A stretch of DNA of 64,000 bases from the NCBI GenBank assembly GCA_964106915.2, contig OZ066916.1. The stretch is one strand, 5' to 3'. This document shows positions 11,297-55,808 of the stretch, piece by piece. The stretch comes from Podarcis gaigeae (lineage: Eukaryota). The notes under the pieces are model-generated. The model worked only from the letters and a program-made list of their open reading frames with translations. It was not told the DNA's origin and did not search any database. The first letter of the stretch is position 1, and every line of letters starts with the position of its first letter. The position numbers were made by a program, and so were the translations under genes.

Positions 11297-12000
11297 AACA
11301 TCAACATCAACAACAATAATAAGCCGAGTGTGTCATACAAGTGGCAAAGAAGATTAATAGGATTGGGGAATATATTAAAAGCAAGGGATATGTGTCTCAA
11401 AATAGTGAAATAGAACCATTGCCAAAATGGAACAATAAATAGCAATAAATAAGTAGCCAATTAATTAAATTTGTGGGATGGGATCCAAGAAACTTCTCAA
11501 ATCGTTCTGTACGCCCAGGAGTTCTATGGGCTTGTATTTGTTAAATAGGTGCTCTTTCCACACCACGTGGCAATCTACTTTTAAAACTTTCAAAGTGGTT
11601 TTGGTATGCCACGGGGTGAGTGGATTGCCTGCTCCTTAAAGAAAAGGTGGAAGGGAATAACCATTACAATCCGACTGGGCATGCCCAAGTCCTTCTTTTG
11701 ATCTTGACCATACACTGTCATTTCCTCTTATGCTTCCCTCCATCCTTCACCACCCAATAAGCTGCCATCTTTCATCACAAAACAAGGTAAGCAGCATTTA
11801 TTTTATTTCCTGAAAGGAAATAAGGTCTTTCAAACCTGCGTAGTATAGATGTATAATATGGGCAACACATGGACAAGCCATAGCCTTTCCAAATGAGTGA
11901 TCTTATTCAGTCATAACATTAGCATCTAAATGAAACCGCGCTTGCTGGCAAGAGTAAAACCAGATTCTGTAATAATGGCCACATAGTTTTATTTTTTAAA

Positions 12001-12050
12001 TACGTGTGTGTGTGTATGCACGCGTGCGCACACACACACACACACACACA
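12001..12050. repeat. Alternating purine-pyrimidine tract (TG)n-CACGCGTGCG-(CA)n
   Basis: About 50 bp of uninterrupted RY alternation, read directly. Confidence 0.9.
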
Positions 12051-12380
12051 TCAGCAGAGAAATCAATTATGGATTCGCCCCTCATCTGCTCCTTAGACAC
12101 ATCTGAAGCTTTGACGTTGTGAATTCCGTTTATTTGCTGCTGGCCTAATAATCCCCTGCATGCTGGGAAAAACCTTTGTTCTCTGACAGAAGTAATAAAG
12201 CTGTCTCCACGATTCCCCCTTGTGAGACAAGGAGTGCTCCCGTTTTATTTAATCGGCTGGTGTGCTGCCTTTTCAAAGTAAACACTTCACAGGGACCCAA
12301 GGCAGAAAGACATGCCAATGACAGGTCTGCCATGTATTTTTTTTTTAAAGAGAGCTTTAGCCTCTTTTTAAAAATAATAT

Positions 12381-12414
12381 TAATAATAATAATAGTAATA
12401 ATAATAATAATAAT
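12381..12414. repeat. (TAA)n microsatellite
   Basis: Direct reading, one interruption. Confidence 0.9.
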
Positions 12415-12652
12415 ATGTCCTCACTTAAAAAATAAACTCAGCCCTTCATGAGAAACTCAGGTCAAGCAGGCCTTGACTTGGAGCACGTATCTCCTTGTGG
12501 AAGTGCTTCAGGTCCCTTTCCTGAATGACTCCCCCTCTCCGCCTTTCCCTATTCCCCAAGTCTTCATTCACTTGTTCCCAGTGAATAGAGAGCAGGGAGA
12601 AAATGAAGCGATCTCAACGACAGCAGGAGGCCGGCTGCTTTCTTTTAAGCAT

Positions 12653-12944
12653 NNNNNNNNNNNNNNNNNNNNNNNNNNNNNNNNNNNNNNNNNNNNNNNN
12701 NNNNNNNNNNNNNNNNNNNNNNNNNNNNNNNNNNNNNNNNNNNNNNNNNNNNNNNNNNNNNNNNNNNNNNNNNNNNNNNNNNNNNNNNNNNNNNNNNNNN
12801 NNNNNNNNNNNNNNNNNNNNNNNNNNNNNNNNNNNNNNNNNNNNNNNNNNNNNNNNNNNNNNNNNNNNNNNNNNNNNNNNNNNNNNNNNNNNNNNNNNNN
12901 NNNNNNNNNNNNNNNNNNNNNNNNNNNNNNNNNNNNNNNNNNNN
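12653..12944. other. Assembly gap (292 N)
   Basis: N run. Confidence 1.
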
Positions 12945-13360
12945 CATACATTGTCAAGTGAGTTCCTGATAAGCGGGATCTTCAGCCAGTGTTTGTGCTG
13001 CTTGGCTTCCTTTAATCATACTCCCTTTTGTAAAAGGGATTTTGAGGGGGGAAAGATAAATCATTGCTGAGGAAAAAGGTCATTTTCAAAAGGCTTTAAG
13101 AGCTTCATTTTGTGTGGCTTTTCAAGGTGAAACAGGTAATTCAGTGCAGTGGAAGTCTTTTGTATTCAACTTAATTCACACTTCACACCATCACCAAAAA
13201 AAGAGAAAGAAGTAATGAAATAAGCTTGAACAAAGTCCTTTATTAAAAGTGTTTCCCATACATATGTGAGGTGAATTTTGTTGTTTGCTCACACACAACA
13301 CTGAACATTAAAAAAAGGAAAGAAACTTATTTAAAGGTGTTTAGCCAGGCTTTCACTCAC

Positions 13361-13524
13361 CTATTGCTCCACTTTCGGTGTATTTTATTTGCTCCAGTAA
13401 AAAAGAAAAAGAAAATGAAACCACGACTCCTTTCCTCCAGTCATCATTTCTGTATTCCCTTCCCTGGTGTACAGATGCACATTTTCAGGCATGGATTTGG
13501 ATAAAATGACCAGTGAGCCTACCG
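13361..13524 (-). other. Candidate non-coding exon (164 nt)
   Basis: Minus-strand acceptor TTTCTTTTCCTCAG and donor TAG|GTGAGT; stops in all three frames. Confidence 0.25.
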
Positions 13525-15486
13525 CTGAGGAAAAGAAATCCAGAATAGACACATTTGTATTCTACGAAGGTGAAATGAAGAAGAGCCTTCCTATCTCTAT
13601 CTCTGCATCTATATCCTGCTGTTTTTACAAGTTGGCCAGGAAAATAATTGTTTTGCTCAAGTACTGGTTAGAAAACAGGGAAAAAAAATATTATGAAGAG
13701 ACATAGTCAGTAGGAGAGGAAACAAATATGTGGTGCAGATGTGGGATGCTATGGAGATTAGATAAGGCAAGCCTCAGATATTGCTCTGTGTTACAGTGGT
13801 TAAAATCTGAGATTTCATTTCTTTTAGTGAAAGTAAAGATACCTGTCAATTAAAGAAATGTGTTTCATCCACCCCAAAATAAACATTTCATGGTACTTTG
13901 TAATGACAAAAGGCTAATGTTTTGTGATTGGTATATTGTGCAGTACATTTTATGTAAGCAATGCATAATAGAATATATCATTCAGCCAAACAGAAAATTC
14001 CAGTGAAAGCTATTATATGAAACGACTGATAGTTGAATTAAAATTCAATAAAGCAATGGAAGACTTAAAAAAAATTCAACAGGAACAAATATTTTGATGA
14101 AATCAGCATTTATTTCAAGACAATTCAAGAAAAGTTTTACAGTTTCATTACTGTGCTTTTCTGATTTCTTTGTGACCGGTTATTTAAAAATGAGAATGAA
14201 AATCGCCTCCTTTCCCTAACGTATCCTCAAACCTGCACAGATAATTGGGAATGGGGGTGGTTGCCTTTTAGGATGTTGATAGAGTAATTTGTTGCTATGA
14301 TATAGGAAGCCATGATAGTTTGATCCTATGGCATTTGATTAGTGATGCTTGCGGAATTCCTTCTTTGCAAGCACACAGACACCACACATACAGGGAGAGA
14401 GAGGTGCACACCCCAGAATGTTTATAACAATTCACATTTTAGGGGGAAAATATGAATGTGTATTTTGTGACATAAAATAAATTTGAAAACATTTATTGAA
14501 ATACATATTGAGAAAAAATTGTATGAATTAAATAAAAATTTACAGTAATGCAGAAATGGGATGGAAAAATACATGTGAAACAGACACAGACTGTAAAACA
14601 GCCTGATTTATCCCTCTTTTTAATATAGCAGTAGGCTATGATATGGGTTCTGATGCTTCACTGGATAATGACTTACAACACAGGAATGGCGTGACTAATT
14701 CCATGTCTAAGTAACTTTAGAGTTCTCTCCCCTTAATGCTGTGTATTGTGGAAAACACAGAAATACTGATAAATGAGAGAAGCGCGTTTTGCGATCACAT
14801 TTTCCCTAATATAAAAAAAGGCAATGCACTTTAAAATTTCTTAAGGAGAGGGCAGCAACAGATACTTGGATGTACTACTTTTGAAATGGTTACTTTTGAA
14901 GGGAGTAAACAAAAGAGTGTGACAGTTCCACTACAAGAAACGAGCACATGCAGAATTCAACAGCGTTTGTTACAGGCAATCCTTTCATGCAGGGCAAATA
15001 GGACTTTCAAAGGTTTGCTTCAGCTGCTGCAAGGAACTTGAAAGAACAACCAGCACTTCCACTGAAGATCAAAAAGTCTAAACTCCGAGGTCTAGCATTG
15101 GATTCCATGTCTGAGTGTAGTCATGCTCTAGTAGCACAGCGGAGTATTGTAATTTTTCTTTTCTGCAAGAATATTAACGGAGTTCATTTCTCCACAGCAG
15201 AATCCCATCAGAGCCAAGTGCCTGTGCAGGGAGCATGTGCACATCACTCCTGGTAACAGGGGAAGTTATGCTCCAGTCAATAGAAAATGAAGGACTACTT
15301 ATTACTGTCATATGGGTAATGGGCACTTTAATTTGTATGGAAGATTCCAAGATAAAAGAACATTTGTCCTTTCTTTCCCCCCAAGCTGGGGTGGGGAAGA
15401 AGCAATTTTATTTGTGCAAAAAAGCAGCGTAGAGAGTCAATGGGGGAGATAATAGTTGACCATGGGGAATTTCATGAACGTATATA

Positions 15487-19240: not shown

Positions 19241-19374
19241 NNNNNNNNNNNNNNNNNNNNNNNNNNNNNNNNNNNNNNNNNNNNNNNNNNNNNNNNNNNN
19301 NNNNNNNNNNNNNNNNNNNNNNNNNNNNNNNNNNNNNNNNNNNNNNNNNNNNNNNNNNNNNNNNNNNNNNNNNN
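19241..19374. other. Assembly gap (134 N)
   Basis: N run. Confidence 1.
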
Positions 19375-50500: not shown

Positions 50501-52971
50501 CGTGGCTGCTGCTGCCCTGCAGCATCAACAACTGTGTGGGCAGGCCTAGCCACCATTTTGTATCCTCCATCATCCTAGCATCATTCTGAGGCATCGTGTG
50601 AAGGAAATGGTGACTACTACAAAAAAGAAAAAGAAGCAGAAGGGGAATATTAGGAGGAAATTCTTCCTGTTCAAGGGTATGAGAGAAAGATAGGAAGAGA
50701 AAAAGGCCCTGGCAAATTTCTTAGGAAAATGTCCTGGCAAATTTCAACTGCCGTTTTTTGAGACCAAAGAGTCGGAAATAAGTGTGTTGATGATTCAGCA
50801 TGTAGCTAGTTCAAACTTCTGCTAATACTTGATGAATGGCATGCATTTTGTATGGATACTGAAATTAAAATCTGTCACTGTATTCCTAATATTTGTTGAT
50901 CAGGACCAACCTTAAACCCTGGAATTCTTTATCCTTCATTCCTGGGCTTGCATAAATGATGTCTTGGTCAAACACATGCCTAATTTGTGGGAATGATATG
51001 TAATCACATATCAAAACATTCATGAAGTCTTATTAAGTCTGTAATTTAGCAGCAGCTGTTGGCCATCTTTATCCACTTGCTTGTAAATCATACTCTGTGG
51101 ACAAAGGTTCCGGGATTATACATTTGTTTAGGTCCCTAAAGCTCTTGTAGCTTACAAGATATCACTTTTCATTTCCACATCCTGGAAGAGCATTGTAAAT
51201 GTGAACAATAATAGACCCGGTCTAAGTCAGTTTATTTCCATTAAATACAGCACCTGAGACTTGATAGTGACATTTCGGGGCTCCTGTGTTGTAAAACTGG
51301 ATTGTCAAGGTCCTGTAGTAGCATAAGGGGAGGCGAGACCACTAGTGGATTGATGAACTAAGCATAGTTCTTTGCTTGTTTTCCCTGCCATAGCAAAGGG
51401 AGGATAATGACTGAAATGAAAGACACTAAATGGGTAGTCAACCACCATCAGATTTTGGTTGATTCATCATGTAGGAAGACCACTATCAGCTACTTTGTGA
51501 CTTTGCTATTTTGTATATATTTTTGGTGGTTATTTTATTTAGATTGTTGCAGCGACCCGTGTAAACATGGTTGCACACAAGTGGGAGGTGCATAAGTGTG
51601 TGTGGGGGGGAGAGTTCCTGTAAATGCTCACAAACTTTGCATCTACCTATATATTATTCACAGATGTGAGCACATCCATATGCTTGCACACACAAAACAT
51701 GCATTAATTATCCTACAAAAATTGTAAAGGTATAGGCTTTGATATTACAGGCCCCTATTTTCCCTCACCTGAAAACATATTCTTACAAACCACTCCATAG
51801 TGTTCTTGAATCCTTTATGTCACACATACACGCACAGACACACAGGTGCACACACCATTTAAAGAAAACAGTTTAGGGATTTGGTTCAAAGAATAAGGAC
51901 AATTAGGAAAGAACGACTCTCAAGTTCAATCTTAATTTGAAGTTAGAGAGGCTCAGGGAGACAGTTGGGTCAATTTTCTGTTCTCTGTCCAGTCAGCTCT
52001 CTGTACTACTCAACCAATCCCAATCCAATAGTATTGCTATGGCAAAGACTTCCCCTCCATGCATCTCCAGGCCAACAACAACAAACAGAAGTGAAAATTT
52101 TATATTGTTGGACTGCTAGCTACTTAGCCTCACTTGTGCAGATTCCTACTCCCTCCTGTTATCATGAGGTCAATCCAACCAGAGGATATAGCCATCGGTG
52201 GTATACCAGCTTCTGGTATCCTTTCGGAATCAATACATATGTTCTGGAGGATATTCAGAGCAGTTTCCATTGGTATGGCTTAATTTCTTTTTCTTTAAAT
52301 CTTATTCTTTCCATAGATGTGTTTTTTCATGAGGAGACAATGGCACTCTGTATGTGTGTAATGGCACACTTTCTTAAATAAGTGTTGTACTTGTGATGAA
52401 AACAGCAAGGTTAAACTTTACAGCCCTACCAAGTCGAAATGTTGCCAGCCAGGAGTGGGAAGAAATGTGCATTCATTTCCCCGGTGAATTTCTGCTTATC
52501 TGTGTTGACACATAAAAGGGCATTAAGGCCTTTGAAAAGTAACATGAGAAGTGGACAGAATTCTTGCAGACAAATTTGAGGAGCAACTGATAGTAATTTC
52601 AAACCTAATCACACTTGGAGTCCGGGGGTCACAATTCACCATGATGAAAAGGCTTTAATTTTATTTAAGGAGGATGCAAAAGTATGTAATCAATATACAA
52701 GCATTATCCTAAAGTGGATTCAGTGCCAGTGTATTTCTCCTTATGCCTCTTATGAAGATGGACTTCAGCATCAGAAGGATTGGATGACATGGACCTTTTC
52801 AGCTTAGAAAAAGGGTGAGTAGGGGAGACATGATGGAGGTGCTTAAAATTATTCATGGTACAGAAAATGTGGACAGAGAAAGGTTTTCCTCCCTCTTTCA
52901 TAATATTAGAAACCATGTTCATTCCAATGAAGCTGAAGGTTGGAAGAGGCAACACAGACTGTGTTTTTTTA

Positions 52972-53170
52972 GTTACAGATAGGTAGCCGTGTTGGTCTGC
53001 CATAGTCAAAACAAAAAAAATTCCTTCCAGTAGCACCTTAAAGACCAACTAAGTTAGTTCTTGGTATGAGCTTTACCTGGTATCTGAAGAAGTGTGCATG
53101 CACACGAAAGCTCATACCAAGAACTAACTTAGTTGGTCTTTAAGGTGCTACTGGAAGGATTTTTTTTTGT
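52972..53170. mobile_element. Penelope-like element (PLE) terminal fragment with inverted pseudo-LTR structure
   Basis: GGTAGCCGTGTTGGTCTG...GTAGCACCTTAAAGACCAACTAAG resembles reptile PLE ends; 64-bp inverted arms 53011-53074 and 53107-53170 (63/64); possible TSD TGTGTTTTT(T/C)TA at 52960-52971 and 53168-53179. Confidence 0.8.
53078..53119 (+). ncRNA. Minimal type I hammerhead ribozyme motif
   Basis: Stem I UGGUAU/AUACCA; core CUGAAGA plus one extra A; stem II GUGUG-CAUG-CACAC; GAAA; palindromic AGCU in place of stem III; UC cleavage site after 53113. Confidence 0.82.
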
Positions 53171-53200
53171 GTTTTTCTAAACTATGGAATACACTGCCAT

Positions 53201-53360
53201 CAGTAGAGGTCCTTGGGTTCTCAAATTTCAGTTGCACCTTGTGAGACACCAAAATTTGGTGCCCCCACCTCCGACCTTCCATTCTATGTCATAGTTGTGG
53301 TGCTGCCTGTGGCATCTTTGATTCTCTCAATCTGATCGCGCTCCCCTAAATCCGCCTCTG
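53201..53360. mobile_element. hAT (Tip100-like) MITE nested in CR1
   Basis: Right end CCCCTAAATCCGCCTCTG (reverse complement CAGAGGCGGATTTAGGGG), degenerate left end CAGTAGAGG; CR1 sequence is contiguous across it. Confidence 0.7.
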
Positions 53361-54227
53361 TTTCCACAAGTTGTGGTGATGGTCACCAACTTGGATGGCT
53401 TCAAAAAGGAATTAGACAAATTCATAAAGGATAAATCTTATAAATGGCTATTAGTGCTACTGTCAGTATGGTAAGCCTCTGAATTCTAATTTCTGGGAAT
53501 CACAAGTGGGAGAAGGCCATTGATCTCCTGTCCTGCTTATGGGCTTCCCAAAGGCACCTCATTAGCCATTGTGAGGACATAATGGTGGAGTAGATGGTCC
53601 TTTGGTCTGTCAGCGCAGAGCTCCTGTTATGTTCTTATGGGGGCAATGTGGTAATCATGGATTTGACAGGATTCAGTCTGTCAACACAACTGATCAAGAC
53701 ATCTGACACAATACATTTGTTTCTCCAGAATACTTCCAGCAATTTGTCAGAAAAGTATTTCCAAAGCTGAAGTCAAACTGCTAAACTCATTTTACCTTTT
53801 AGAGAAAGCGGTCCACAGTGCTACGGCAAAATTGAAGCTGCTGCTTAGAAACAACAGCAGGGGACATTAAACACAATTTTATAGTCTGGTTATTGCTGGA
53901 CATAACTATGATTAGTTGGGACCATCAGCACAGACTGTCTTGCAACCTGAGGTATTGCTGTCTCAGGCAGCCAGGTACCAGGGAAAACAAATACCTCCGC
54001 CTCCTTTGGGAGGAAATGAAGCATCAAGTTAAATTTCTTTCCCTGAGCTAACAAAGCCAGGAAAATGCAGGTTGGAGCAGAGGAGGGAATCCACATAATT
54101 CTACAGGAGGGTTTTCTTTTAAAAGCTGTGCGCCAAGGAGTCATCTAGGCGTATGAATATTCATGGGGATTAAAATTAAAATACAATTAAAACAATCCTG
54201 CTGCAGGTTATCACTGTTGTTGACTGA

Positions 54228-54300: not shown

Positions 54301-54732
54301 AGCACTAATTCAGCTATTTGCTTCAGACTCCTATCTGACTTGTTTCCTTCAGACTCCACTGAGGGTTTATCCTCACCAGAACCCGGACAAACACTTTCTT
54401 TATGCCACTGCTTGAACTTCCTAAATGTGTGCTTTTAAAGACTTAAAAATCCATGCCAGAAGTATTAATTCAAAGCATGCTCACTTGTCTTTCTAAAGTC
54501 CGATTTTATTTCAGGTAGAACACTCTGAAGTGTTTGTGCAAAATGCACCTAAACAAGTCTATTTCTGATTTCCTGCTTATGCTTACTTTGCAGCTGAATT
54601 TTTTAACACCTCTCCGAGCTTATTGTATGCATGTGGCCAGGAAAAACTGGTGTTTAAAATTCTGTATAAAATAAACATAGTAATAATATTCTTCAAGCTT
54701 TATGTCAGAACTTGCAGAACACATGAAGGGGC

Positions 54733-55370
54733 ACTGGCGTCAACTGCAGGGGGCCCTGGGGGCCTAGGCATGTACAAAATGGTAACTGTGGGAGCCTGGC
54801 CTCCGTCCATTGCCCGCTGCCCATTGCCCCACCTCTGGCTCTCTGGTGCCATGGCAATGACTGAGCTGGGGCTTCCATTGGGGCTCGCTGTGGCCGCGGA
54901 CATGCACCCATGGTCCCCTACCCCCACCTGGAGGCCTAGAAGTGGCAGCGGAGAACATCATCATTGTGCATCATGGCATGATGTCATCACATTGCATTAT
55001 GGTGTAACATCATCAGGTCATCAGGTTGTGCTGCACTGTGATGTCATCACCTCACATTGCAGCACGCACCGCTAGATACCCATGATCTGGCGCCCATGCT
55101 GATGCCTCTGGGAGGCACTGGGGTACGAAGGGGGATGGGGGGAAGCATGCTGCACCAGGTACCATTTGGGGAAAGGGTGCCATCATGGCCACTCGCTCCC
55201 AGGATGCATGCCACACCCTCCTGGGATGCATGCTGCATGCTGCGCAACCTCGGGATGCATGCTACGCCCCCGTGGGAGACACGCCAGCCACGCCCCTGCC
55301 TGTTTTCCACTCCAGGGGCTGCAGCATGTTGCTCCGCCACTGCTGGGAAGGAGCCAGAATACACTGTGAT
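54733..55370. mobile_element. GC-rich, internally repetitive non-autonomous DNA element (hAT-like), family uncertain
   Basis: Starts CACTGGCGTCAACT..GGGGGCCCTGGGGGCC; internal TGATGTCATCA and GGGATGCATGC repeats; abrupt GC rise. Confidence 0.45.
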
Positions 55371-55808
55371 TTTGCCACACTGAGAATGATTTTCTGAGAA
55401 TGAAGGGTTTCCTGAAAGGAAACCCCTGGATGGTCTCTCAGTTTAAACTGCTATGCTGTTCACTGGTTTTGAATGTGCCTGGCCTGATTAGAGAAATGAT
55501 TTTTTCAGAATTTCAAAGTAGTCCTTCATTCCAAAGATTAACTTGTAGGAGAGAAAATACCTAGCTTGTTGATAGAAGAGTTTTCTCCATGGTTTTTCAA
55601 ATGAGGAACCCCTTTATTAACTTCACAATAACGATGAAACAACTGTCTTCTAGGGCTTTTCACTGTATGCTTATGTCACTGTAAATAGCAATTATCACAT
55701 GTGTGGTATCATGCAAACTGAACAATAGCTTGAAAGGGTACATTTGCCTGAATGCAACACCTACTCATGAGAATTGAATGTTATCACTGATGTTTATTAA
55801 TTAATTCA

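What the first reader, a model, noticed from the sequence alone, without database searches (positions are those of the whole stretch)
53078..53119. Complete minimal hammerhead ribozyme motif inside a short Penelope-type insert
Seen: all hammerhead core residues are present in order (CUGAAGA 53084-53090, GAAA 53106-53109, UC 53112-53113), with a 6-bp stem I and a perfect 5-bp stem II. Stem III is reduced to the palindrome AGCU, and there is one extra A after A9. Established: Penelope-like retroelements carry minimal hammerheads of this kind in their pseudo-LTRs, and these are thought to cleave as dimers through the palindromic stem III. Inference: this is a young, possibly cleavage-competent ribozyme in a non-coding ~200-bp mobile unit, so it may represent an abundant non-autonomous, ribozyme-bearing element family in this lizard lineage.
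Basis: partly seen in the sequence, partly recalled or inferred. Interest (0 to 1): 0.8.

Follow-up and report, generated by a model that had tools for sequence, protein, structure and literature searches.

The report
Fold-back Penelope fragment with minimal hammerhead
The hammerhead motif is real, but it sits in a young 196-bp scrap of a very abundant lizard Penelope-like retrotransposon, two truncated tail ends pasted head to head, whose long hairpin should keep the ribozyme from folding, so this is an ordinary member of a known kind.

Summary
At 53078-53119 (+) there is a type-I minimal hammerhead: CUGAAGA, one extra A, a 5-bp stem II, GAAA, the palindrome AGCU and C17. My descriptor finds it once in the window and never in 100 shuffles. 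Rfam hammerhead models do not see it. The motif has every hallmark published for Penelope-like element (PLE) minimal hammerheads, so the "extra A" is a family trait and not a defect.

The insert is 52972-53167, 196 bp, with a 12-bp target duplication. A contig from a related species (organism E) shows the empty site. The family is very abundant: 11,500-14,000 contigs per DNA run match it.

The insert is not a 200-bp mobile unit. It is two 5'-truncated 3' ends of the element joined head to head. The arms are identical at 53 of 53 positions. One ends 54 nt and the other 96 nt after the cut site, which resembles the PLE "tail" geometry of Anolis Poseidon (+55 and +89).

In a transcript of the whole insert the 67-bp hairpin takes over the 3' half of the ribozyme; stem I probability is about 1e-10.

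Cleavage, transcription and an autonomous master were not tested. This scan has already noted the same family many times in this genome, with the same conclusion. Interest is low.

The parts
52960..52971 (.). Left copy of the 12-bp target-site duplication (TGTGTTTTTTTA), an AT-rich target.
   Evidence: Direct repeat D2. The empty-site contig of organism E joins 52969 directly to 53178 (record 25).
52972..53167 (.). The whole 196-bp insert: a fold-back made of two truncated PLE 3' ends.
   Evidence: Summed contig depth jumps from 10^1-10^3 in the flanks to 10^5-10^6 exactly over bins 52968-53177.
52972..53074 (-). Antisense arm. It is a 5'-truncated copy that starts inside the HHR (at A13 of GAAA) and runs 96 nt past the cut site.
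   Evidence: (reverse complement identical to the right arm over 53 nt).
52972..53013 (-). About 42 nt of extra 3' sequence present on this arm only. This is the candidate PLE 'tail'.
   Evidence: About 100 contigs per run leave the family sequence at 52970/52971 and run into heterogeneous flanks (table 7). Compare the 30-40-bp one-sided tail.
53075..53079 (.). Junction letters ACCTG of unclear origin. They lengthen stem I from 4 to 6 bp.
   Evidence: loose ends at 53080, and low depth with variants at 53075-53078.
53080..53167 (+). Sense arm. It is a 5'-truncated copy that holds the complete HHR and ends 54 nt after the cut site in a T run.
53078..53119 (+). Type-I minimal hammerhead motif, with the predicted cut between C53113 and A53114.
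   Evidence: The architecture matches the PLE min-HHR and the Anolis Poseidon HHR.
53092..53105 (+). Stem II plus loop II, a perfect 14-nt palindrome (GUGUGCAUGCACAC). It holds one of the insert's two CpGs, at 53105/53106.
53008..53074 (.). Left arm of the 67-nt, 97% complementary inverted repeat. Its partner is 53107-53173, with a 32-nt apex between them.
   Evidence: I1. The whole-insert fold is -120 kcal/mol, z -16.8.
53107..53173 (.). Right arm of the inverted repeat. It contains A13-A15.1, GCU, C17 and the 3' strand of stem I.
53168..53179 (.). Right copy of the target-site duplication (TGTGTTTTTCTA), matching the left copy at 11 of 12 positions.

Best explanation
The insert 52972-53167 is a dead-on-arrival insertion of an abundant Penelope-like retroelement (PLE) family. 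It consists of two 5'-truncated copies of the element's 3'-terminal ~100 nt, joined head to head at the hammerhead. Shown here: a discrete insertion with a 12-bp duplication of an AT-rich target; an empty site in a related species; two arms identical over their shared 53 nt; one arm 42 nt longer at its outer end; one complete PLE-type minimal hammerhead at the apex; and a very high family copy number. Inferred: both target strands were nicked, and each primed reverse transcription of the same RNA from one of two internal start sites (without and with the 'tail'). The two cDNAs were then joined near the hammerhead by template switching. This fits what was shown in vitro for Anolis Poseidon, which cleaves and extends both strands and has two start sites about 34 nt apart. 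In source elements the motif is thought to process the PLE RNA, as a dimer or with help from the element's protein. At this locus it is a passenger. There is no partner motif in cis, and any transcript of the whole insert folds into a 67-bp hairpin that removes stem I and buries the cleavage site.
For: Motif. [quoted passage not shown] All are present. The Anolis Poseidon HHR, read from its published consensus, has the same architecture (CUGAGGA-U-stem II-GAAA-CGU-C) with entirely different stem sequences. Insertion: the TSD. The organism E contig runs 52800-52969 and then directly 53178-53302, skipping 208 nt, which is the 196-bp insert plus one 12-bp TSD copy (record 25). Contigs of organisms A and B run from the flank into the insert (records 1, 7 and 17). 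Abundance: 11,542-14,067 contigs were laid per DNA run, and depth is 10^3-10^5 times the flanks. Fold-back: (67 nt, 97%), and the arms are identical 53/53. End geometry: 54 and 96 nt after the cut, against +55 and +89 for Poseidon (cut at +29/30, starts near +85 and +119). The published PLE hallmarks are 5' truncation, an adjacent inverted truncated copy and a 30-40-bp tail at one end only. Inactivity here: stem I pair probabilities are about 1e-10, hairpin pairs are about 1.0, and the HHR-forced fold is 13.5 kcal/mol worse. Single min-HHRs are inactive in vitro.
Against: No RT/GIY-YIG ORF lies in the window, and I could not fetch a full-length copy. The link of this sequence family to an autonomous PLE therefore rests on motif architecture, insertion hallmarks and unchecked notes from this scan. 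The contigs of organisms A and B reach only 22 and 18 nt into the insert, which is below the tool's 31-nt bridging rule. Family-wide evidence for a tail-less end is ambiguous: the loose ends at 53014 and 53155/53167 look like linker variants of subfamilies. The 5 junction letters at 53075-53079 are unexplained. No covariation was seen within the family. The only variants of 5% or more between 53080 and 53118 are 53105 C>T and 53106 G>A (G12), both at the single CpG, and 53113 C>T (C17); 53119 A>T, at the outer end of stem I, also varies. Core conservation above the flanks is therefore not statistically shown (0 master-type changes in 34 nt against 4 in 54 nt). Rfam gives no hit.
Confidence: 0.77

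Rival explanations
1. One reading: the ~200 bp is one copy of a non-autonomous, ribozyme-bearing mobile unit (retrozyme- or SINE-like) whose hammerhead can cleave.
For: The insert is short and non-coding, has a TSD and carries an intact core. About 0.5% of the family depth covers a similar apex, so fold-backs at this spot recur (table 3). Earlier notes from this scan describe 284-319-bp non-coding tandem-HHR mini-elements in the same genome. A 2026 preprint derives animal retrozymes from PLE pLTRs.
Against: The insert has one HHR only, with no tandem unit and no loop 1-loop 2 contacts. The two arms are the same segment in opposite orientation and have unequal outer ends, which a transcribed unit would not regenerate. 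Most family copies continue upstream of 53080 into other sequence. The hairpin abolishes the HHR fold.
Confidence: 0.07
2. The motif is conserved in PLEs for a reason other than self-cleavage in vivo, for example as a folded RNA element that the element's protein recognises or that stalls reverse transcriptase. On this view 'ribozyme' overstates its role, in source copies as well.
For: Min-HHR activity in vitro is low. In Anolis Poseidon, no RNA-seq reads begin or end at the cut site, HHR mutants do not change insertion in vitro, and cleavage needs the protein. Both truncation points of this insert fall at the HHR.
Against: C3/G8 single mutants abolish Poseidon RNA cleavage and the double mutant partly restores it. 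PLEs of fungi and plants carry efficient canonical HHRs. Unrelated PLE families keep the catalytic core while their stems differ.
Confidence: 0.12
3. The fold-back has been taken over by the host as a hairpin-RNA or miRNA-like small-RNA source.
For: The hairpin is 67 bp and 97% paired, with z -16.8. There are sub-threshold hits to miRNA precursor models on both strands (mir-559, 62.4 bits).
Against: The score is below the gathering threshold of 95. The hits are symmetric on both strands, as for any long palindrome. The insertion is absent from a related species, so it is not conserved. No RNA evidence could be obtained, because all runs were contigs and the 'RNA?' labels were guesses.
Confidence: 0.04

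Closest known systems
Minimal hammerhead ribozymes of metazoan Penelope-like elements (Cervera & de la Pena 2014, PMC4209133)
   Same: It is a type-I motif with an open helix I and no loop 3. It has the palindromic 15.1-16.1 tetranucleotide (AGCU), an unpaired nucleotide between A9 and 10.1, G10.1-C11.1 and a helix II longer than 4 bp. It occurs in thousands of mostly solitary, truncated copies. The paper reports such motifs in reptiles (turtle, snakes).
   Different: The primary sequence was not found in the literature held here. Helix II plus its loop is a perfect 14-nt palindrome. This copy has an accidental 6-bp helix I.
Poseidon_Ac (PAc) of Anolis carolinensis and its HHR (Frangieh et al. 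2024, PMC11167929)
   Same: It is a lizard PLE with the same HHR architecture. Insertion ends lie about 55 and 89 nt after the cut site there, against 54 and 96 nt here. The target is AT-rich. Both target strands are cleaved and extended, which would give head-to-head copies.
   Different: All stems have different sequences (stem II GCCUGC.. against GUGUG; helix III ACGU against AGCU). In PAc the ORF starts in stem II. Here every frame stops within about 45 nt after the motif. The tail here is 42 nt, against about 34 nt in PAc.
Complex tandem/inverted PLE insertions with a one-sided 30-40-bp tail (Arkhipova 2006; Craig et al. 2021, PMC8557442)
   Same: It shows strong 5' truncation, an inverted truncated copy directly adjacent, and an extension at one end only.
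   Different: This is an extreme miniature. Both copies are cut down to about 90-100 nt, so nothing remains but the fold-back.
Non-LTR retrozymes of animals (Cervera & de la Pena 2020, PMC7229834; Li et al. 2026 preprint)
   Same: They are non-coding, carry a type-I HHR, and are related to PLE pLTRs.
   Different: Retrozymes are tandem units with canonical HHRs that have loop-loop contacts and give circRNAs. Here there is a single minimal motif and no tandem.

Membership tests
PLE minimal hammerhead (min-HHR) | Catalytic boxes CUGANGA ... GAAA ... UH in type-I order, with helices I and II. | tested here: met
   The descriptor scan gave 1 hit against 0 in 100 shuffles.
PLE minimal hammerhead (min-HHR) | An unpaired nucleotide between A9 and 10.1, and a G10.1-C11.1 pair. 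| tested here: met
   A53091; G53092-C53105.
PLE minimal hammerhead (min-HHR) | No helix III hairpin; positions 15.1-16.1 are palindromic, allowing a dimer. | tested here: met
   AGCU at 53109-53112. Dimer formation itself was not shown. Cofolding of two monomers prefers a 14-bp intermolecular helix II.
PLE minimal hammerhead (min-HHR) | Lies in the pLTR of an element that encodes a telomerase-like RT and a GIY-YIG endonuclease. | not testable with these tools
   No such ORF is in the window and eukaryotic contigs could not be fetched. Unchecked notes from this scan report such ORFs ending at hammerheads elsewhere in this genome.
PLE minimal hammerhead (min-HHR) | Self-cleavage after position 17. 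| not testable with these tools
   Only Logan contigs were available, so there are no read ends (table 6: none).
PLE insertion architecture | A 5'-truncated copy with an adjacent inverted 5'-truncated copy. | tested here: met
PLE insertion architecture | A 30-40-bp 'tail' at one end only (two RT start sites). | tested here: met
   A 42-nt excess on the left arm only; the ends lie 54 and 96 nt after the cut. Family-wide clustering of tail-less ends remained inconclusive.
PLE insertion architecture | A discrete insertion into AT-rich DNA with a target duplication. | tested here: met
   12-bp TSD; empty site in organism E (record 25).
Rfam hammerhead families (Hammerhead_1, _3, _II, HH9, HH10) | Reaches the covariance-model gathering score. 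| tested here: not met
   No hit at gathering score, nor at E<=10 on 351 nt or on 53 nt.
Non-LTR retrozyme | A tandem repeat unit bounded by canonical type-I HHRs with loop 1-loop 2 contacts. | tested here: not met
   There is one motif only, no tandem and an open helix I.
mir-559-like miRNA precursor | Reaches the Rfam gathering score. | tested here: not met
   62.4 bits against 95, and equal on both strands.

The most novel reading that the evidence does not exclude
The folded hammerhead may be a hot spot where PLE reverse transcription stalls and switches template. On this reading, fold-backs with their apex at the ribozyme arise again and again. Both truncation points here lie at the motif, and about 0.5% of the family depth covers a similar apex. 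Such inserts would then be natural footprints of two-strand target-primed reverse transcription from the two RT start sites. A side possibility is that these 67-bp hairpins feed small-RNA silencing of the family.
Probability: 0.15. Interest if true: 0.4.

Novelty: new member of a known kind. Interest (0 to 1): 0.15.

Why it matters
The finding matters little on its own. It is one more truncated copy of a retroelement class whose minimal hammerheads, inverted and tandem layouts, and tail are all published. This scan has already met the same family many times in this genome. Its modest value is as a clean natural example, with an empty site, a TSD, identical arms and two different 3' ends, of the two-strand, two-start-site insertion so far shown only in vitro for Anolis Poseidon. 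It also serves as a warning that an intact hammerhead core in a genome does not imply a foldable ribozyme.

Tried and rejected
1. Rfam at gathering score and at E<=10, on 351 nt and on 53 nt, gave no hammerhead hit. The miRNA, leader and sRNA hits only reflect the long hairpin.

2. I considered a type-III reading in which the 67-bp helix serves as helix III. I rejected it by hand: helix I would then need U-U and A-A pairs and a loop that is too small.

3. I considered snap-back self-priming of a single cDNA. I rejected it because the left arm carries 42 nt that the right arm lacks, so it must have been copied from a template holding the tail.

4. Exact scans for the 30-nt core in metagenome and viral contigs found nothing.

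5. A full-text search for a 22-nt string of the motif found no paper. The supplements of the 2014 paper are not held.

6. Pfam on the window's 8 longest ORFs gave nothing. There are no other family copies or min-HHRs in the window.

7. I first took the loose ends at 53014 and 53167 as proof of recurrent tail-less ends. I withdrew this because their consensus (...ACAAAAT and TTTTGTTTT...) looks like linker variants of subfamilies.

8. Testing conservation of the core against the flanks from the variant table was inconclusive.

9. RNA evidence could not be obtained. No run is on record as RNA, all runs are contigs, and so nothing can be said about expression or cleavage.

Full report
**Observation**

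- Stem I is UGGUAU (53078-53083) paired with AUACCA (53114-53119).
- CUGAAGA is at 53084-53090, followed by one extra A at 53091.
- Stem II is GUGUG/CACAC closed by the loop CAUG (53092-53105).
- GAAA is at 53106-53109, GCU at 53110-53112 and C17 at 53113.

The isolated 56 nt fold into this three-way junction as the minimum-energy structure. The energy itself is unremarkable (-12.7 kcal/mol, z -1.3). A min-HHR descriptor that I wrote finds exactly this site in the 64 kb and none in 100 shuffles. It requires the core boxes, an optional bulge, G10.1-C11.1, a palindromic 15.2/16.2 pair, U16.1, H17, stem I of at least 4 bp and stem II of at least 4 bp. A relaxed version also finds only this site. 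Rfam 15 does not recognise it at any threshold tried. That is expected for a motif without a helix III hairpin, but it means membership of the curated hammerhead families is not met.

**What kind of hammerhead**

Cervera and de la Pena (PMC4209133) list features that recur in PLE minimal hammerheads although their search descriptor did not require them:
- a G10.1-C11.1 pair;
- palindromic positions 15.2-16.2 with no loop 3;
- a helix II longer than the canonical 4 bp, and a short open helix I.

All of these are present here. The Poseidon element of Anolis carolinensis has been characterised experimentally. Reading its published consensus gives the same layout (CUGAGGA, U, a 6-bp stem II, GAAA, CGU, C) with entirely different stem sequences. 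The core is thus kept across unrelated PLE families while the helices differ.

**The insert**

A 12-nt direct repeat flanks the element, at 52960-52971 and 53168-53179 with 11 of 12 positions matching. This defines a 196-bp insert at 52972-53167. I laid Logan contigs of four public runs on 52800-53400.
- A 3,635-nt contig of organism E runs 52800-52969 and then directly 53178-53302. It skips 208 nt, which is the insert plus one copy of the duplication. This is an empty site.
- Contigs of organisms A and B run from the flank into the insert. They reach only 22 and 18 nt, because the assemblies break at the repeat, and this is below the tool's 31-nt bridging rule.
- Over bins 52968-53177 the summed contig depth is 10^5-10^6. 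In the flanks it is 10^1-10^3. Each DNA run laid 11,542-14,067 contigs.

The family is therefore very abundant. The tool warns that depth is not a copy number.

The flanks are themselves moderately repeated. They carry a short ORF with a motif that I recognise from memory as the C-terminus of CR1-type LINE ORF2. I did not test this.

**Anatomy**

The insert is a fold-back. The arms 53008-53074 and 53107-53173 are 67 nt long and 97% complementary, with a 32-nt apex between them. In element sense, the right arm (53080-53167, + strand) holds the complete hammerhead and ends 54 nt after the cut site in a T run. The left arm (53074 back to 52972, - strand) starts at A13 of GAAA, 7 nt before the cut site. 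It runs 96 nt past the cut site and so carries 42 nt that the right arm lacks. Over the 53 nt they share, the two arms are identical.

About 100 contigs per run leave the family sequence within 1-2 nt of 52971 and run into heterogeneous AT-rich sequence. This outer end is therefore a recurrent family terminus (table 7). Other copies continue upstream of 53080 as ...CTGT(C/T)TCAGT. The five letters at 53075-53079 are a junction, and the canonical helix I is only GUAU/AUAC.

**Mechanism**

These features match the published hallmarks of PLE insertions: strong 5' truncation, an adjacent inverted truncated copy, and a 30-40-bp tail at one end only (Craig et al. 2021).

Frangieh et al. 2024 showed three things in vitro for Anolis Poseidon:
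- the protein cleaves and extends both strands of an AT-rich target;
- reverse transcription starts internally, at two sites about 34 nt apart;
- those sites lie near +85 and +119 with the HHR cut at +29/30, that is, 55 and 89 nt after the cut.

The arms here end 54 and 96 nt after the cut. I therefore infer that both target strands primed cDNA synthesis on the same RNA, one from each start site. The two cDNAs were then joined near the hammerhead by template switching.

A single snap-back cDNA is excluded, because the left arm holds sequence that is absent from the right arm. The inference is not proven. The family-wide evidence for tail-less ends turned out to be ambiguous, and the junction letters are unexplained.

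**Is this copy an active ribozyme?**

This is unlikely, for four reasons.
- There is one complete motif and no partner in cis.
- Single PLE min-HHRs gave no detectable cleavage in vitro, and dimers cleaved only weakly.
- The Poseidon HHR cleaved only when its protein was added, and left no read ends in RNA-seq.
- In an RNA of the whole insert, the antisense arm pairs with GAAAGCUCAUACCA. The fold is -113.9 to -120 kcal/mol (z -16.8). Stem I pairs have probabilities near 1e-10. Forcing stem I costs 13.5 kcal/mol.

The sense arm alone would fold as the hammerhead.

**Conservation across copies**

At a share of 5% or more, the variants between 53080 and 53118 are:
- 53105 C>T and 53106 G>A (G12; 12-18% of depth), both at one of the two CpGs of the insert;
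- 53113 C>T (C17; 4-9%).

53119 A>T, the outermost base of stem I, also varies (5-22%), and I count it with the downstream positions below.

The downstream arm has variants at 20-51% share at 53121, 53125 and 53140. These are mirrored at 53060, 53056 and 53041 and look diagnostic of subfamilies. So lineage-type changes number 0 in 34 nt of the ribozyme, against 4 in the 54 nt behind it. This is suggestive but not significant. No compensatory pair was seen. Dead copies decay at the CpG, as neutral DNA does.

**Autonomy of the family**

No RT or GIY-YIG ORF lies in the window. All three frames stop within about 45 nt after the motif. I could not fetch full-length copies. Earlier notes from this scan report RT/GIY-YIG ORFs ending at hammerheads, head-to-head truncated PLE insertions and 284-319-bp tandem-HHR mini-elements elsewhere in this genome. 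The look-up showed 8 of the 181 notes that fit 'hammerhead'. I used these as leads only.

**Verdict**

The motif is of the Penelope type, the insert is young and the family is abundant. The ~200 bp is not a mobile unit, however, and this copy is very probably inert. It is a new member of a known kind, already found repeatedly by this scan on other DNA of the same genome. Interest is low.

Noticed in passing
window 53092-53105: Stem II plus loop II (GUGUGCAUGCACAC) is a perfect 14-nt palindrome. Cofolding of two monomers predicts a 14-bp intermolecular helix II, a domain-swapped dimer, rather than the AGCU helix III dimer usually proposed.
   Followed up: partly
window 53075-53079: The junction letters ACCTG match neither the canonical upstream sequence nor the antisense arm. 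About 0.5% of the family depth covers a similar apex, with 53075 deleted and 53077 C>G. Fold-backs centred on the hammerhead therefore recur.
   Followed up: partly
window 52700-52971 and 53180-53480: The host sequence of the insert is itself a moderately repeated element. Its depth is up to about 7,000 against about 44 for single-copy contigs in X1. The ORF at 52815-52982 carries a ...RGDMMEVLKIIHG... motif that I recall as the C-terminus of CR1-type LINE ORF2. This was not tested.
   Followed up: no
window 53024-53157, both strands: There are sub-threshold Rfam hits to miRNA precursor models (mir-559 62.4 bits against gathering 95; also mir-606 and mir-126). The long palindrome alone causes them.
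   Followed up: yes
window 54800-55400: A 600-bp block has 58-60% G+C against 40% for the window. It is CpG-poor, has overlapping ORFs of 59-150 aa on both strands, and contains short tandem units of 22 and 29 nt at 55188-55263. It is probably another repeat. No ORF tested from this block (54623-55075) had a Pfam domain.
   Followed up: partly
window 12653-12944 and 19241-19374: There are two runs of N, 292 and 134 letters long.
   Followed up: no
run X19 (organism I) laid on window 52968-53177: Runs guessed to be RNA hold family contigs at depth of about 10^3-10^4, against about 5 in the flanks. One is a 2,132-nt contig that starts at the tail. This could mean the family is transcribed in that species, but the RNA label is only a guess.
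   Followed up: no
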